IMG/VR virus record: IMGVR_UViG_3300034358_000008
Location: 1-64,000 of that record
DNA length: 64,000 bases
Direction: 5' to 3' (one strand)
Shown: piece after piece, positions 8,310-15,933 of the stretch
Layout of the letters: each line of letters begins with the position of its first letter
Numbering within the stretch: the stretch's first letter is position 1
Notes under the pieces: model-generated
Databases searched by the model: none
What the model saw: the letters and a program-made list of their open reading frames with translations, nothing else
Told to the model about the DNA's origin: nothing
Translations under genes and position numbers: made by a program

Positions 8310-8317
8310 TATATTAC
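8310..8317 (+). promoter_or_regulatory. phiKZ-type early promoter motif TATATTAC
   Basis: Exact motif in an AT-rich intergenic gap upstream of 8333. Confidence 0.7.
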
Positions 8318-8332
8318 TCAGGTAGAATCCAA

Positions 8333-9257
8333 ATGAAAGAGAAAGCAGTTCTTCACGGTAACTGGATTTACGATCGTAATGATGGCTGGCATCTAGCAGT
8401 CTATCCAATCGTAACCATCATGCCTCGACCAGGTGAACCACCACTATACAGTTCTTTTGTATTGGTGCAGTCCGAAGTACTGAATACAATCGGTACTCCA
8501 ACTGATGCTATCGAACGGATGTTTAGTTCGACCGCTCCACCCGTATCCAACATGACACTGTATAACCTCGGGGTAGTGGAAGACGAGCATAGCTGTGAGG
8601 AACTGGATCTGTTCCTAGTTTGTCCTACAGCCGACATGTCCCATAGTCCAACGCATTCGTGTATTGTTCAGGAAGGTTACATGTACGTCGAAGATCTTGG
8701 CATCGATGATACGGATGAACAACTGGACTGGCAAATCTATCAGGCACTCCAACGTTTGGAAGCACCCCACATTCTAACCTGTAGCCCAAAGGTGTGACAT
8801 GCAAACTAACTATAAGTCGGTAATGTTCAAACGAATCGTTAACGTCAAGTGGTTAATAGAAGCGTTTAAGACTTTCCCTGCTGTACTCAAACGGAAACAA
8901 CGTAAGTACTTGCTGGACAAACCGTATTTCAAAATACCATTCGATCAACAGGGTCCAGCATTGTTGGCCAATGAAACTGGCTTATGGCAGGTACAAGTAA
9001 AGCATGGCGATACTGAGGAAATCACAGGTATGTGGTTTGTTGACGTTACCCATGACTACAGCATGCGCCCTGAGAACTGGTACGATGGTAAAATACGAAT
9101 CGTCCGAGTCAGTAAGGATAAGTTCATGTTACTGAACTTCCCACCGATCTACTATTCCAGTGAAGCACCCGCACAACTTTACCTCGTGATCAAATCGCAT
9201 ATCGAACACGAAGGCCGTAGTATTAACCTTAGACCAGAAGTGAATGGTGACTTATGA
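8333..9257 (+). other. Two hypothetical CDS (8333-8797, 8799-9257)
   Basis: Coupled ORFs downstream of the early promoter. Confidence 0.7.
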
Positions 9258-9607
9258 GTATTTATTTTGAAGGCAATGGTAATCCAAAAGCCGTTGGTAT
9301 TAGCGAAGCACGTGACCAATTCATCTATGCTCTCAAAGAGATGCGTGATGAAGCATTGAACGATCCATACCTCGATGCGTATGAGGACTCTGCTGCACGT
9401 GATACCGCTGTAGCCAATAAGATCATTGGTGGCGTGTTGGGCGTACTGGATGGTAACTCCACCCACTTCCCTGCAATGAACTTGCTCCCATACGTTTCCG
9501 AAGAGGACGTTACTGCTGCTAAAGAAGCCGGCGCTGATTACTTCGACAGCGGTAGTGGCGACATCGGTCAAGGTCTGCAAGAGTACTGGAATCTGGTGAA
9601 CTCTTAA
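9254..9607 (+). CDS. Small acidic protein, family member 1 of 8
   Basis: IIGGVLGVLD core and C-terminal LQEYWNLVNS. Confidence 0.75.
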   Translation: MSIYFEGNGNPKAVGISEARDQFIYALKEMRDEALNDPYLDAYEDSAARDTAVANKIIGGVLGVLDGNSTHFPAMNLLPYVSEEDVTAAKEAGADYFDSGSGDIGQGLQEYWNLVNS

Positions 9608-9861
9608 TGGCCAGTCTAGAACAAGACGTCTTGTTTACGATCTTCGGTGAACTAGATGACCTCCGCGATACATTGATAAAGGATAGCCCTAGACTTACGC
9701 CTACGCAACTAATCGAAGCTGCTATCATGCGTACAGCAGATGTCATTGAAGGATGCTTCGAGTTGAAGGCCATCGGGGTATGTGAATCCAATGGTGATCC
9801 ACATTGGTGTAAAGGTATCGCTGTGGAATGCAACCGTTATTGGTCTGAGGTAAGTACATGA
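9607..9861 (+). CDS. Small acidic protein, family member 2 of 8
   Basis: AAIMRTADVIE core and C-terminal RYWSEVST. Confidence 0.75.
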   Translation: MASLEQDVLFTIFGELDDLRDTLIKDSPRLTPTQLIEAAIMRTADVIEGCFELKAIGVCESNGDPHWCKGIAVECNRYWSEVST

Positions 9862-10422
9862 ATGTTCAATGGTCCATTGAAGGTACCAAGTTGCGGTTTG
9901 ATATATATTACCGCAAACAAAATGAAACCAGTGAAGGTACGAGTGGCTGTAGTACCAGCTGGTTCCAAGAGATAACAACCACGATTAAAGATGCGGCTGA
10001 AATTATCATCGCTAACGTTAAGGTCGATTGGAACTGGCGAGCAATGGAAGGTCTTAACGATTGGACCAAACTGGTAGAGGATGTATAAATGTTCAAACCG
10101 CATGAACGTTACACTGCTGTATTCCCAGTACTCGAGGCGAGTAATCTACCTGATGCTGGTACTATCGTAGAACTCACTTTTAAAGGTTGGTACGATAACC
10201 GATTGCTCTTCGTTGTTTGGCCTGCGGGTAAACCAATCCCAAAAGAGTTTGAAGGTCGTCAATTCCTCTATGTCAATCAAGAAGCCGGTACAGGTGTATT
10301 GACTTTGCGTACAGCTATTAATGGTACTGGCGAACCACCCTTCCAATCGTACGGTGTGTTGTCTATCGCCGGGACAAGTGAAGAGCTTGGTACATTGTTG
10401 ATTGAATTCCACAAGGTGTAAC

Positions 10423-10716
10423 ATGACAGATAACATAGTAGACAGTGTAAAAGGTAATGTAGCTTTCCTACTTGGTGGTATCCGCACTGGATTGCTATCG
10501 AATAGTAGTAGCATGACCCCTGAACAACTGGTGGACCAAGCTATCGCATCCACTCTGGATGTAGTAGAACAGCAGTTCGAACTACGTGATCCTACCCAAG
10601 AGCACTTGCCGGTAGTAACTGAACTCGCTAAGTGTTATTGGGATATGGTTAATGACGATGGGGAAGACCCTGTCGATCTTCGGAAGGCATTCAATGAAAA
10701 CAGCACGGGTACCTAG
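10423..10716 (+). CDS. Small acidic protein, family member 3 of 8
   Basis: QAIASTLDVVE core and LAKCYWDMVN. Confidence 0.75.
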   Translation: MTDNIVDSVKGNVAFLLGGIRTGLLSNSSSMTPEQLVDQAIASTLDVVEQQFELRDPTQEHLPVVTELAKCYWDMVNDDGEDPVDLRKAFNENSTGT

Positions 10717-11067
10717 TGGTCCAGAAATCGACGCATTGATTCATGTGTCTACTGAAGTTACTCTGGCTATGGAGTTATTGGAAGCACAAACCCGTGACTC
10801 TGTACTCCAGAGTATGAAAGATGGTGTCGAACATGGGATGGATAAGCTGATCCAAGCTTACACCGATCTAACACCACAACAAATGAAAGTTGTCAGAGCC
10901 TGTATTGGCGAAGGCGTGGACTATGCCTGTGGTTATATGGCAGCGCACATCCAATTACACGAAAGCATGTTGGGTCTATGTTCAGAGACAGCTCCGGGTC
11001 TAGTTGCCCATGCAGCTGTCCACACTTTCGGTAGCCATGTAAACACTCTTTGGGAAGAAGTAAATTC

Positions 11068-11595
11068 ATGACTTACAAGCTAGAATTGATTGAGCACACT
11101 AACACCGCTAAGCTGTCAAATTACATGCGTCTGTTCCACTACCTGAGCGTATACGAGGAGAACGGTAGCCTTCAACAAACGATTGAAGCTGAGTTGTTGA
11201 ACTTTGATCGTAAAGGTAAGTTTCAACATCAATTCAATCTGGTGTTAGCGCGTAATGACGCAGGTAGTATTGTAGGGTACGTCTTCTATTACCCGCGTGC
11301 GAAACGTGTTGAGTTCTATGTGTTACCCACTTGGCGTAATAAGGGTGTAGGTAATGAGTTGGTACTCGGTGTACGGACTTGGTCTAAATACTCTACCCTT
11401 TGTGGTTATCCGGGCTTCGGTTGCTGGAAAGAGTTCTTCGAAAAGAACTTCATCCTTAACATCGACAAGTACATGTCTATCAGTCGTGTCGACGTTGCTA
11501 AGTACGGTGGGGCAGTAGAAGCGTACAAAGCTGTAATGAAGGCTGAGAAACTTCGTCTATCCCGTGAACTACGTAAGGTACTGGATTTCATCTAA
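11068..11595 (+). CDS. GNAT-family N-acetyltransferase
   Basis: EFYVLPTWRNKGVGNEL acetyl-CoA-binding motif A; later EFFEKNF. Confidence 0.75.
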   Translation: MTYKLELIEHTNTAKLSNYMRLFHYLSVYEENGSLQQTIEAELLNFDRKGKFQHQFNLVLARNDAGSIVGYVFYYPRAKRVEFYVLPTWRNKGVGNELVLGVRTWSKYSTLCGYPGFGCWKEFFEKNFILNIDKYMSISRVDVAKYGGAVEAYKAVMKAEKLRLSRELRKVLDFI

Positions 11596-11840
11596 TGGAT
11601 ATTTTTACATTCTTCCTGTTGTTGTGCTGGACTGTAGCTGGCGTATGGTTGCTGATCGGTGAACTCCCACGATTCCAGAAACATCGGATCGAACAAATCT
11701 TCGGTGTAAAGAACCGCTGGGGTAAGATGTTCATTGGAGTCGCTCTGCTGGCCTTCTGTAGCTTTCAAGTGTACCTGTGGACCATTGACCCAATTTCGAC
11801 TTGGGAACTTACGTGGGCACCTCTGAAGCTTTCCTATTGA
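11595..11840 (+). CDS. Small membrane protein (2 TM)
   Basis: Two hydrophobic stretches. Confidence 0.65.
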   Translation: MDIFTFFLLLCWTVAGVWLLIGELPRFQKHRIEQIFGVKNRWGKMFIGVALLAFCSFQVYLWTIDPISTWELTWAPLKLSY

Positions 11841-11847
11841 GGTATTC

Positions 11848-13330
11848 ATGCAAACATTCCTTGAACAGGTTGCACTTGGCGCGTTGCTGCTGATTGAACA
11901 TGAAGCGTACGGCATTTACCTTAATCGTAGAGACTTAACTCCCGAACTAGACCCTGATGATGCTGCTCGTGCGGCAGTTCAAAGAGCTATTTTTAGAACC
12001 GTTGAAATGCTGGAACCAAACGAAAAATCTTCAGATGAAGATTGGTTATCACAACTTTACTGGCAAGAGGTAAGTACATGAATACCGATATGCAAATCCC
12101 TGAACAAGATGAAAAGCAAATTCTTGATCACGCTGTTGCAGCTACCACGATTTGTCAAATAGAAGACATATTCATTCACACGGTTCCTGCTAACATGGGC
12201 GATGCCCGTGAGATCGTGGAAAGTGTTCTGGTAATCGTACAAAATAACTTCTATCTGATCCCTAAGGTCATGGTTGAAGACGATAAGCCGGTCGAGCGTC
12301 CAGCTCCTAAAGAAGCAATTACTGAACCACTCTATGAGTTGTGGAATTCCGTTTCCAACTAACCAAACCCTTTTAATAGACAGGTGACATATGAGCGAAG
12401 TTGACAATTTTGTATCGGCAGTAAAAGAGAAACGTAACGAAGCAGTGGAGTATTTCCTATCCGAAGACTTCCATCAGGCTATGGCAAATGGTGTTGAAAG
12501 CCCAGACGTCGTGGTTAAGAAAGGTGTCGACCTATTGGTTGGTGCAGTTCTCGATGTAGTCGAAGAACGTTACGCCGATCTGGTTACCGGTAGTGCAAGT
12601 GATTCCGAAGGTGAAGAAGTCTCGGTTGAACTGAGTATCACCACTGGTCTGTCCACTCTGTACTTCGAAGAGGTAGCTTCTTAATGAGTACTCCTAAAGT
12701 TGATCTCCATCACGGTGAATGGGGTGAGATTAAAATGGGTAATGTAGATGGCTTCATCGAACGTGCGAAAGGTATGCGCGCGTGTGCCCTAGAACTGTTT
12801 GACCAGCGTGCCCTGAAGGCTGCTGCAACTGGTCAAACGATCCCATGGAGTACCTACGTAGCGGAAGCTGTAGATGCAGCTATCGCTGGTACTCTAGACA
12901 TCGTAAGCAATTGCGGTCTGGAAGCTATCACCGAGGTGGAATGCATTATTGGTGATGATGAACAACCAAAAGTAAATATCGCTTTCAGTGATCAACTGGG
13001 TAAAATGTATTTCGAAGCGGTGGGTTCCTAATGGAAGACACCTACGTACCAGAACCGACTATGGTTCAAGTCGTATTGGCTGAACTGAAGAAGATCCCTG
13101 ATAAGGTACTTGAGTTATCAGCTGGTAACTACACCCCAGAAGAACTCATGGTCCAAGCGATCGGTGAGGCTCTGGTGATCGTTGAACGTTTCATGGATAT
13201 CACTTATCAGGAATCCGATCTGCTTCCACCAGAAGGACACACGGGTCCTGAAGTCGCTTTGGTTAAGGTTGCCTATACCGAGAAAGCAGATAACCTTGCA
13301 CAACAATACTGGGATCATGTGAGTAACTAA
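11848..13330 (+). other. Five tandem small acidic paralogs, members 4-8 (11848-12081, 12078-12362, 12391-12684, 12684-13031, 13031-13330)
   Basis: Each ends in L-x(3)-[YL][WF]-x-x-V-x-[STN] and has a central amphipathic AI..TLD.VE-like helix. Confidence 0.75.
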
Positions 13331-13793
13331 AATGTCTACGGTTATCGGAACCAAAGAAATCTACAGTGGTGAGCAACGACCTACTGACAAACAACGTGTA
13401 CTGTATTACTTCGAACCATTTGAACAATGGTACGTTGGTGTATACCACGCGGAAGATGACGCTATCGTTGGGAAGGCTGGGTTCAGTACATGGCAACCCG
13501 AAGTAACTAAATGGATGGATGGAGAACAGTAAGATGCCTATTTACTTTCAGCTGTGGCCACGGTTTAATACTGTAAATCTGTGGAGATTATACCCGTGGC
13601 TAAATCCCGTCGTACTTGCTATTTCAAGAACCAAAAAGAATTCTTCGATAAAGACCGTCCTTTGAGTTGGGAAAACTCCAATAAAAAGAATAAGGTACTG
13701 TGCCATCGCATCGAAAGAGCGTGGGCTAGTCGTCGTCTGTATCAGGAACTCAATCAGCTTTAAATAAAGTGCCCTCCTTCACCGGAGGGCATT

Positions 13794-15899: not shown

Positions 15900-15933
15900 C
15901 GACATATTGCCCCTCCGTTACGGAGGGGCTTTA

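What the first reader, a model, noticed from the sequence alone, without database searches (positions are those of the whole stretch)
9254..13330. Eight-member tandem family of small acidic proteins with a YW/YF-x-x-V C-terminal motif
C-termini are QEYWNLVNS, NRYWSEVST, KCYWDMVN, QLYWQEVST, ELWNSVSN, TLYFEEVAS, KMYFEAVGS and QQYWDHVSN. Each is preceded by an AI..TLDVVE-like helix. The eight highly diverged paralogs within 4 kb, downstream of an early promoter, look like a gene accordion of the kind seen for anti-defence or host-range factors, with one scaffold diversified against different targets (inference).
Basis: partly seen in the sequence, partly recalled or inferred. Interest (0 to 1): 0.65.

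Follow-up and report, generated by a model that had tools for sequence, protein, structure and literature searches.

The report
Jumbo-phage family of small acidic early proteins
A phiKZ-like jumbo phage carries nine old, very diverged copies of a small acidic early protein of unknown function; the copies share a conserved tail and probably pair up, and single copies come and go between near-identical phages, as expected of accessory host-takeover or counter-defence genes.

Summary
The window is the first 64 kb of a 324,912-bp phiKZ-like (Chimalliviridae) Pseudomonas jumbo phage. Between 9254 and 13330 lie nine, not eight, paralogs (77-125 aa, pI 4.1-5.0). In m3 the motif is followed by a 20-aa acidic extension. 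Four unrelated genes interrupt the array, among them a GNAT acetyltransferase. Homology is weak but real. A family profile finds independent members in 201phi2-1, Viktualia, Phabio, PhiPA3 and phiKZ (gp258). Only 17 cluster representatives match among 1.84 billion proteins, and none has a name, a Pfam domain or a solved fold. AlphaFold gives m9 a confident α-α-α-β-β-α model. A co-fold test supports a homodimer whose interface is the two conserved motifs. The phiKZ ortholog is transcribed by 2 min after infection. Contigs 95-99% identical to each other carry 6, 7 or 8 copies through clean deletions. Most paralogs, however, have their own orthologs in other genera, so this is an old multigene family with turnover, not a recent accordion. 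The anti-defence role is untested. The same C-terminal motif also ends three unrelated proteins of this genome.

The parts
8310..8317 (+). phiKZ-type early-promoter-like element TATATTAC after a T-rich stretch, in the gap before the 8333 ORF that heads the operon
   Evidence: Nine exact matches in the window, all on the + strand, against 2.27 expected. Sequence context. Reading it as an early promoter rests on my knowledge of the phiKZ consensus, not on a test here.
9254..9607 (+). m1, 117 aa, pI 4.06, ends QEYWNLVNS; ortholog of phiKZ gp258, 201phi2-1 gp369 and PhiPA3 gp306
   Evidence: phrog_11061 match, E 2e-43. tblastn gives 59-64% identity to jumbo phages. AF2 model has pLDDT 70.8.
9607..9861 (+). 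m2, 84 aa, ends NRYWSEVST; start overlaps the m1 stop (TAATG)
   Evidence: 38% identical to m3. Ortholog of 201phi2-1 gp370 at 52%.
9858..10088 (+). x1, 76 aa, not a family member
   Evidence: No profile hit. Ortholog of 201phi2-1 gp371.
10089..10421 (+). x2, 110 aa, not a family member
   Evidence: No profile, Pfam or PHROG hit.
10423..10716 (+). m3, 97 aa; motif KCYWDMVN followed by a 20-aa acidic extension
   Evidence: The ATG at 10423 is confirmed by database protein P0003. Leave-one-out E 5.9e-8. hhalign of m2/m3 against m9 orthologs: 97% probability, E 4.9e-11.
   Evidence: Start confirmed by homologs P0006 and P0026. First in the leave-one-out search but at E 1.1. hhalign finds only the tail and the 'TPQQM..ACIGEGV' stretch. 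Ortholog 201phi2-1 gp372 ends KYWDDV.
11068..11595 (+). GNAT acetyltransferase, kept in the middle of the array in related phages
   Evidence: PF13508 and PF00583. 201phi2-1 gp374 and Viktualia CDS0088 sit in the same place.
11595..11840 (+). small hydrophobic (membrane-like) protein, 81 aa, syntenic with 201phi2-1 gp375
11848..12081 (+). m5, 77 aa, ends QLYWQEVST; found only in close relatives
12078..12362 (+). m6, 94 aa, ends ELWNSVSN; start overlaps the m5 stop (ATGA)
   Evidence: Orthologs are 201phi2-1 gp378 and PhiPA3 gp311.
12391..12684 (+). m7, 97 aa, pI 4.05, ends TLYFEEVAS; ortholog of 201phi2-1 gp376
   Evidence: phrog_11061 match, E 2.2e-13. 67% identical to gp376 and 91% to close relatives.
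12684..13031 (+). m8, 115 aa, ends KMYFEAVGS; hypervariable slot
   Evidence: 28% identical to m7. No tblastn ortholog at 1e-3 in close relatives, although their slot holds a motif-bearing 109-aa gene.
13031..13330 (+). m9, 99 aa, ends QQYWDHVSN; ortholog of 201phi2-1 gp377
   Evidence: AF2 pLDDT 86.7. Homodimer co-fold ipSAE 0.76 against a best control of 0.00.

Best explanation
Shown: the region encodes nine anciently diverged paralogs of one small (77-125 aa), strongly acidic protein. The family is restricted to Pseudomonas-infecting phiKZ-like (Chimalliviridae) jumbo phages. The genes lie in one tightly packed + strand operon with overlapping stops and starts, behind a phiKZ-type early-promoter-like element. 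Predicted: the scaffold is alpha1-alpha2-long alpha3-beta hairpin-C-terminal helix. The two conserved motifs, AIxxxLDVVE in alpha3 and LxxxYWxxV[SN][SN] at the C-terminal end, form the core and the interface of a symmetric homodimer. Variation sits in the N-terminal helices and in the acidic hairpin region. Inferred: the proteins are made within minutes of infection. They act as soluble stoichiometric binders or decoys of host factors, in host takeover or counter-defence, possibly as nucleic-acid mimics. Each paralog would present a different acidic surface on the same dimer scaffold. Individual members are dispensable and are gained and lost quickly.
For: Family: pairwise hits; leave-one-out ranks; independent profile hits in five other phages down to E 3e-12, converging on 29 members; hhalign m2/m3 vs m9 at 97%, m7/m8 vs m2/m3 at 81%, m7/m8 vs m1 at 61%. 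Restricted range: 37 unnamed hits; 17 representatives among 1.84 billion; tblastn hits in Pseudomonas phages only. Acidity: all nine are in the lowest 8% of net charge. Fold: m9 pLDDT 86.7; m1, folded from its own orthologs only, shares the helix-long helix-C-terminal helix order. Dimer: ipSAE 0.76 in three runs against a best control of 0.00, at least 96% contact agreement, partner pLDDT at least 82. That mark was reached by 20 of 30 proteins solved as pairs and 1 of 23 solved as single chains. The interface includes L19, P23, L48, L89, Y93 and V97, six of the seven invariant or near-invariant positions of the m9 ortholog alignment. Early and soluble: phiKZ gp258 mRNA rises from 0.5 to 25.8 at 2 min and to 250 at 10 min, and the protein peaks in gradient fraction 3, away from ribosome and RNA polymerase fractions (PMC10914614 supplements). 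Dispensability: contigs 95-99% identical carry 8, 7 or 6 copies through clean deletions of m2, or of m5 plus most of m6.
Against: There is no functional evidence. No Pfam, NCBI-named or solved-structure relative was found. No fold match stands above noise: Foldseek on the PDB finds nothing at E <= 0.001, VIA gives a best Z of 5.4, the Atlas gives TM <= 0.41, and BFVD returns only family members. Neighbouring ORFans diverge just as fast (40-80% between the same genomes), so the family is not visibly under special diversifying pressure. The dimer is a prediction made with my own alignment. The C-terminal helix of m1 is modelled with low confidence. gp258 is only moderately expressed in phiKZ. 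The early-promoter reading rests on recalled consensus. No RNA data for this phage could be fetched.
Confidence: 0.4

Rival explanations
1. The C-terminal helix ([YFL][WF]xx[VI][SN][SNT] at the C-terminal end) is a portable docking or sorting tag. A common phage or host partner would recognise it, and the array is only the largest group of its clients.
For: The same tail ends three proteins with no other detectable similarity to the family in this genome: 3 observed against about 0.03 expected. It is kept in the phiKZ gp186 family even in phiKZ, where a 121-nt gap follows the gene. In the 201phi2-1 gp308 family the tail is a ~25-aa add-on to a domain that lacks it in Felixounavirus and other phages. 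In m1 it follows a Gly/Ser-rich, low-confidence linker.
Against: In m9 the helix is modelled confidently (pLDDT about 89) and sits in the predicted homodimer interface. Conservation can therefore be explained without an outside partner. No candidate receptor is known, and no paper held mentions such a signal.
Confidence: 0.25
2. The paralogs are subunits of one hetero-oligomeric assembly, or have a conserved phage-internal (housekeeping) role such as early compartment or nucleus biogenesis, rather than being independent effectors.
For: The genes are co-transcribed and translationally coupled, which favours balanced co-expression. The shared interface motifs could allow mixed dimers. m1 is conserved in all Pseudomonas chimalliviruses sampled, phiKZ included.
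Against: Near-identical phages lack m2, or m5 and m6. phiKZ has one detectable member. The family is absent from non-Pseudomonas chimalliviruses in every search. phiKZ gp258 sediments near the top of the gradient.
Confidence: 0.15
3. The shared tail is a by-product of translational coupling: Shine-Dalgarno sequence and spacing for the next gene lie inside the last codons. On this view the proteins are unrelated ORFans.
For: GAG GTN (E-V) gives GAGGT 7-9 nt before the next ATG in m2, m5 and m7. Stops overlap starts as TAATG or ATGA.
Against: V at position -3 occurs in only 13% of 112 other coupled genes. The aromatic pair uses synonymous codons (TAC/TAT, TTC/TGG) and lies outside the Shine-Dalgarno sequence. 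m6 and phiKZ gp186 keep the motif with no adjoining gene. Homology extends over the whole length.
Confidence: 0.03

Closest known systems
phrog_11061 / VOG9824 (phiKZ gp258, 201phi2-1 gp369, PhiPA3 gp306), function unknown
   Same: m1 (E 2e-43), m7 (2.2e-13) and m8 (0.004) match this profile. phiKZ gp258 is the ortholog of m1.
   Different: The PHROG covers only part of the family. m2, m3, m4, m5, m6 and m9 fall outside it, and m2 falls into phrog_3008, misleadingly named 'DNA methyltransferase'. No function has been assigned.
Poxvirus K3L-type gene accordion (recalled from the literature, not tested here)
   Same: It is a tandem array of one gene in a virus, copy number differs between close relatives, and a host-interaction role is suspected.
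   Different: Accordion copies are recent and near-identical and expand under selection. Here the copies are 15-38% identical, most have their own orthologs in other genera, and the recent events seen are deletions.
Small acidic DNA-mimic anti-restriction proteins (T7 Ocr, ArdA; from general knowledge)
   Same: They are small, very acidic (pI about 4), expressed early and dimeric (dimer predicted here).
   Different: There is no sequence or fold similarity. No binding to any nuclease is shown. Chimalliviruses already shield their DNA in a vesicle and a nucleus.
Acyl carrier protein
   Same: It is a small acidic helical protein. Profile positions 32-80 match it weakly (E 0.065-0.34), and the 'LDVVE' helix recalls ACP helix II 'DSLDTVE'.
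   Different: The match is below threshold. No conserved serine aligns with the phosphopantetheine site. The model has a beta hairpin that ACP lacks, and Foldseek does not find ACP.

Membership tests
phrog_11061 (gp258-like, unknown function) | Significant match to the family profile | tested here: met
   m1 2e-43, m7 2.2e-13, m8 0.004. The other six give no hit at E <= 0.1, so membership holds for three of the nine. The rest are linked through my own profile.
Gene accordion (recent tandem amplification) | Copies lie in tandem | tested here: met
   Nine copies lie within 4.1 kb on one strand, interrupted by four other genes.
Gene accordion (recent tandem amplification) | Copies are recent and near-identical | tested here: not met
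   Copies are 15-38% identical. Separate orthologs for m1, m2/m3, m4, m6, m7 and m9 exist in other genera.
Gene accordion (recent tandem amplification) | Copy number varies between close relatives | tested here: met
   Contigs 95-99% identical carry 8, 7 or 6 copies, all by deletion.
DNA-mimic anti-restriction proteins (Ocr/ArdA-like) | Strongly acidic surface | tested here: met
   pI 4.05-5.02; all nine are in the lowest 8% of net charge among the genome's small proteins.
DNA-mimic anti-restriction proteins (Ocr/ArdA-like) | Sequence or fold similarity to a known mimic | tested here: not met
   No Pfam hit. No PDB match by sequence or fold.
DNA-mimic anti-restriction proteins (Ocr/ArdA-like) | Binds and inhibits a DNA-binding host enzyme | not testable with these tools
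   Needs biochemistry or genetics.
Phage anti-defence / host-takeover early proteins (functional class) | Expressed immediately after infection | tested here: inconclusive
   This is shown only for the phiKZ ortholog gp258, present at 2 min.
Phage anti-defence / host-takeover early proteins (functional class) | Neutralises a defined host factor | not testable with these tools
   No partner is known.
Acyl carrier protein | Conserved Ser of the DSL motif and a four-helix fold | tested here: not met
   There is no conserved Ser in the aligned helix. The model has a beta hairpin. The PDB profile match has E >= 0.065.

The most novel reading that the evidence does not exclude
The tail [YFL][WF]xx[VI][SN][SNT] at the C-terminal end is a portable helix module specific to Pseudomonas chimalliviruses. 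It would let otherwise unrelated early proteins (the nine-member array, the gp186 family, the gp308 family and orphans) plug into a common partner or into each other. That would make it a viral short-motif sorting or oligomerisation code, for example for an early-infection compartment. The array would be the diversified client set of that code.
Probability: 0.2. Interest if true: 0.75.

Novelty: new member of a known kind. Interest (0 to 1): 0.5.

Why it matters
Most early genes of nucleus-forming jumbo phages have no known function, yet they decide host takeover and escape from immunity in the first minutes of infection. This work turns a run of 'hypothetical proteins' into one defined family with four testable properties. 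These are a predicted dimer scaffold with two interface motifs, variable acidic surfaces, natural knock-out variants in near-identical phages, and a phiKZ ortholog (gp258) in the best-studied model. If members prove to be inhibitors of host factors, the family would be a new inhibitor scaffold. If the tail proves to be a portable tag, it would be a new kind of targeting signal in phages.

Tried and rejected
- Megablast of the region against GenBank phages gave no match.
- Pfam gave only sub-threshold noise: Gp6_2nd, Collectrin and others.
- Fold searches with the m9 model found nothing. Foldseek on the PDB had no hit at E <= 0.001, and HU/Alba/Hbb rows had TM about 0.2. VIA wide gave a best Z of 5.4, below the noise level stated by the tool. 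BFVD returned only 201phi2-1 and Phabio family members. The ESM Atlas gave TM <= 0.41 by shape and nothing by features.
- The ACP lead was rejected: E 0.065-0.34 in the PDB profile search, no conserved serine and a different topology.
- Two 3,000-aa proteins in the big search (P0043, P0044) match a short stretch repeatedly. The segment has no Pfam domain and was treated as spurious.
- x1 was tested as a tenth member and rejected: no profile hit, and its orthologs lack the tail. Phabio gene 368, in the same slot, does end FFNKVNT.
- Translational coupling as the cause of the motif was rejected (and the cases without coupling).
- Literature searches for gp258, gp369, gp306, gp186 or a C-terminal signal in chimalliviruses found nothing relevant. 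JADA, the Avs5 activator (phiKZ_124), is an unrelated 721-aa protein.
- The DNA-pattern scan of four related genomes for the tail gave mostly chance hits in AT-rich phiKZ. Only in-frame cases were used.
Full report
**What the window is.** The window is the first 64 kb of a single 324,912-bp contig. Member m1 is 59-64% identical, by tblastn, to hypothetical proteins of Pseudomonas jumbo phages Phabio, PhiPA3, 201phi2-1 and Viktualia. It is 44% identical to those of phiKZ-like phages, and all 63 matching records are Pseudomonas phages. Gene order around the region follows 201phi2-1 gp366-gp380. The genome is therefore a nucleus-forming phiKZ-like (Chimalliviridae) jumbo phage. It is not closely represented in the GenBank phage collection, since megablast finds nothing.

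**Checking the observation.** All eight quoted C-termini are present in + strand ORFs between 9254 and 13330.
- A ninth member was missed: m4 (10694-11071) ends NTLWEEVNS.
- In m3 the motif KCYWDMVN is followed by 20 further acidic residues. This is not an accident of this genome: 201phi2-1 gp370, a Viktualia gene and metagenome contig L009 also end ...VND plus a short extension.
- The starts of m3 (ATG 10423) and m4 (ATG 10694) agree with independently called database proteins.
- The array is split by four unrelated genes: x1, x2, a GNAT acetyltransferase (PF13508/PF00583) and a small hydrophobic protein. The GNAT and membrane-protein pair sits at the same place in 201phi2-1 and Viktualia.

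**Is it more than chance?** Pairwise similarity is low (15-38% identity) but forms a consistent network: m2-m3, m7-m8, m3-m9, m1-m7, m2-m5.
- In a leave-one-out test, a profile of eight members ranked the ninth first among 690 window ORFs in 8 of 9 cases, with E from 5.9e-8 to 1.1.
- The nine-member profile finds non-training members in 201phi2-1, Viktualia, Phabio and PhiPA3 at E down to 3e-12, and finds none elsewhere in the 325-kb genome. Iteration converges on 29 members in six phages.
- Profile-profile comparison of ortholog groups gives 97% probability (E 4.9e-11, full length) for m2/m3 against m9. It gives 81% for m7/m8 against m2/m3, 61% for m7/m8 against m1 and 33% for m1 against m9. 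For m4 it finds only the tail and a short 'TPQQM..ACIGEGV' stretch. m4 is therefore a probable member and the other eight are secure.
- The strict tail pattern ends 10 of 475 crude gene calls, against 0.03 expected from its internal frequency.
- All nine proteins fall in the most acidic 8% of the genome's 171 small proteins, and seven fall in the most acidic 3.5%.

**A trivial explanation, tested.** The genes are packed with overlapping stops and starts (TAATG, ATGA). The codons for E-V (GAG GTN) form a Shine-Dalgarno sequence for the next gene. This adds a constraint at the nucleotide level but does not explain the motif.
- V at position -3 occurs in only 13% of 112 other coupled genes.
- The aromatic pair uses synonymous codons and lies outside the Shine-Dalgarno sequence.
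- m6 and phiKZ gp186 keep the tail without an adjoining gene.

**Distribution.** The word-index search with the family alignment returned 37 proteins. None has a name or a Pfam domain, and many come from metagenome contigs of 300 kb or more. Because these scans left the protein open, I ran the exhaustive profile search. Only 17 representatives among 1.84 billion reach E <= 0.001. All the short ones carry the tail. Two 3,000-aa proteins match a short stretch repeatedly and look spurious. PHROGs places m1, m7 and m8 in phrog_11061 (unknown function) and m2 in phrog_3008, named 'DNA methyltransferase'. That name was probably carried over to Viktualia CDS0085 and is not credible for an 84-aa protein without methyltransferase motifs.

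**Structure.** With the family alignment, AlphaFold2 models m9 at mean pLDDT 86.7 as H11-19, H22-29, H36-54, E57-65, E78-86, H89-98. No solved or predicted structure outside the family resembles it convincingly.

m1 was folded from its own orthologs only, so its model is independent of the family alignment. It is less confident (pLDDT 70.8). It shares the order helix, long helix, short beta region, C-terminal helix. It adds an N-terminal hairpin and one more helix, and it places the tail after a low-confidence Gly/Ser-rich linker.

**Homodimer test.** A co-fold test of two m9 copies passed.
- ipSAE was 0.76, 0.76 and 0.75 against a best control of 0.00. At least 96% of contacts agreed between runs, and partner pLDDT was at least 82.
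- In the tool's calibration the mark was reached by 20 of 30 proteins solved as pairs and by 1 of 23 solved as single chains. Those counts hold only roughly, because my own alignment was used.
- The symmetric interface comprises alpha3 (39-51), the N-terminal helices (10-27), strand 54-61, and L89, Q92/Y93 and H96/V97 of the tail.
- It contains six of the seven invariant or near-invariant positions of the m9 ortholog alignment: L19, P23, L48, L89, Y93 and V97.

It is a prediction, not a measurement.

**Expression.** The octamer TATATTAC, which I recall as the core of the phiKZ early promoter (Ceyssens et al. 2014; not verified in the library), occurs nine times in the window. All nine are on the + strand, against 2.27 expected. 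One lies at 8310-8317 in the gap upstream of the 8333 ORF that heads the operon. Seven other sites share a longer upstream consensus, which the 8310 site matches only partly.

Direct data exist for phiKZ (supplements of PMC10914614). gp258 mRNA rises from 0.5 before infection to 25.8 at 2 min and 250 at 10 min. That is about ten times below the strongest early genes and ten times above genes not yet expressed, such as gp1-gp4. The protein is detected 10 min after infection, as I recall the paper's sampling time, and peaks in gradient fraction 3, far from ribosomes.

**Evolution.** Orthology mapping shows:
- m1 corresponds to gp369, m2/m3 to gp370, m4 to gp372, m6 to gp378, m7 to gp376 and m9 to gp377 of 201phi2-1, at 33-67% identity;
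- m5 occurs only in close relatives;
- the m8 slot is hypervariable: its neighbours are 91% and 62% identical between the same genomes, yet the occupants of the slot are not alignable by tblastn.

The duplications are therefore older than these genera. This is an old multigene family, not a recent accordion.

Turnover is nonetheless fast. Three metagenome contigs that are 95-99% identical to one another carry 8, 7 and 6 members. One lacks exactly m2. Another lacks m5 and most of m6, leaving a 31-aa ORF that still ends ELWNSVSI. Counts by profile are 9 here, 5 in L009, 5-6 in 201phi2-1 and Viktualia, 5 in PhiPA3, 4 in Phabio and 1 in phiKZ. Counting by tail adds larger proteins in Phabio (369, 370) and PhiPA3 (308). 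Divergence of family orthologs (52-91%, or not alignable) resembles that of neighbouring ORFans (40-80%), so I see no special signal of diversifying selection.

**An unexpected extension.** The same tail ends three proteins of this genome that show no other similarity to the family.
- The phiKZ gp186 / 201phi2-1 gp283 homolog (G000 279650-280072). Its tail is kept in Phabio, 201phi2-1, PA1C and phiKZ itself (FFEDVNS). gp186 is a very abundant immediate-early protein in phiKZ.
- The orphan next to it (280072-280377).
- The 201phi2-1 gp308 homolog (294854-295234). Its first ~100 residues are shared with proteins of Felixounavirus and other phages that end before the tail. Only the chimallivirus versions carry the ~25-aa extension ending [YF]F.E[VI][SN][STN].

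A fourth protein (307644-308084) and its 201phi2-1 counterpart (ending YWDLVNG) are borderline family members located elsewhere in the genome. The tail may therefore be a portable module. Whether it is a docking or sorting tag, or a helix that can be recruited for oligomerisation, is open.

**Conclusion.** The family is real, larger than reported, restricted to one lineage, early-expressed by orthology, acidic, probably dimeric, individually dispensable and uncharacterised. The most likely role (about 0.4) is that of soluble binders or decoys of host factors during takeover or counter-defence, with paralogs differing in their variable acidic surfaces. The main rival (about 0.25) is that the tail is a shared tag for a common partner. 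A hetero-oligomer or housekeeping role is less likely (about 0.15), because near-identical phages lack different members. The accordion label fits only loosely, and the anti-defence claim remains an inference.

Noticed in passing
outside the window: G000:C1 279650-280072, 280072-280377, 294854-295234, 307644-308084 (loci L012, L013): Three proteins unrelated to the family (homologs of phiKZ gp186 and 201phi2-1 gp308, plus an orphan) end with the same tail. In the gp308 family the tail is an add-on that homologs in non-jumbo phages lack. A fourth protein carries YWDMVAED plus 9 residues.
   Followed up: partly
window 16769, 17137, 37922, 52455, 54601, 58103, 63026 (weaker at 8310), + strand: Seven sites share an extended promoter-like consensus, TAGAA-N4-5-TTTAAA-like-N3-4-TATATTAC, all on the + strand. 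The eighth site, at 8310, matches it only partly. The ninth TATATTAC, at 9904 inside x1, lacks the upstream part and is probably chance.
   Followed up: partly
window 11068-11840: A GNAT acetyltransferase and a small membrane-like protein sit in the middle of the array. They do so in 201phi2-1 (gp374, gp375) and Viktualia too. Any functional link with the family is unknown.
   Followed up: no
window 9600-13335: Stops and starts overlap along the array (TAATG, ATGA). The Shine-Dalgarno sequence of the next gene (GAGGT) is encoded by the E-V codons of the conserved tail, so the last codons carry a double constraint.
   Followed up: yes
window 10652-10716: m3 and m4 overlap by 23 nt. An upstream in-frame ATG at 10652, exactly at the end of the m3 motif, would give a 139-aa m4. 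Database homologs support the 10694 start.
   Followed up: partly
L008:11836-12480; also L006 and L007: A GIY-YIG homing-endonuclease gene lies just downstream of m9 in one of three near-identical contigs only. The same contigs differ by clean deletions of m2, or of m5 and m6.
   Followed up: partly
L004:12357-12620 (Viktualia CDS0085): This gene is annotated 'DNA methyltransferase' but is an 87-aa m2/m3-type family member. The name probably comes from phrog_3008 and looks wrong.
   Followed up: partly
window 13770-13791 (- strand) and 15909-15929 (+ strand): Strong terminator-like hairpins lie downstream of the array. The + strand one, at 15909-15929, may mark the end of the operon.
   Followed up: no
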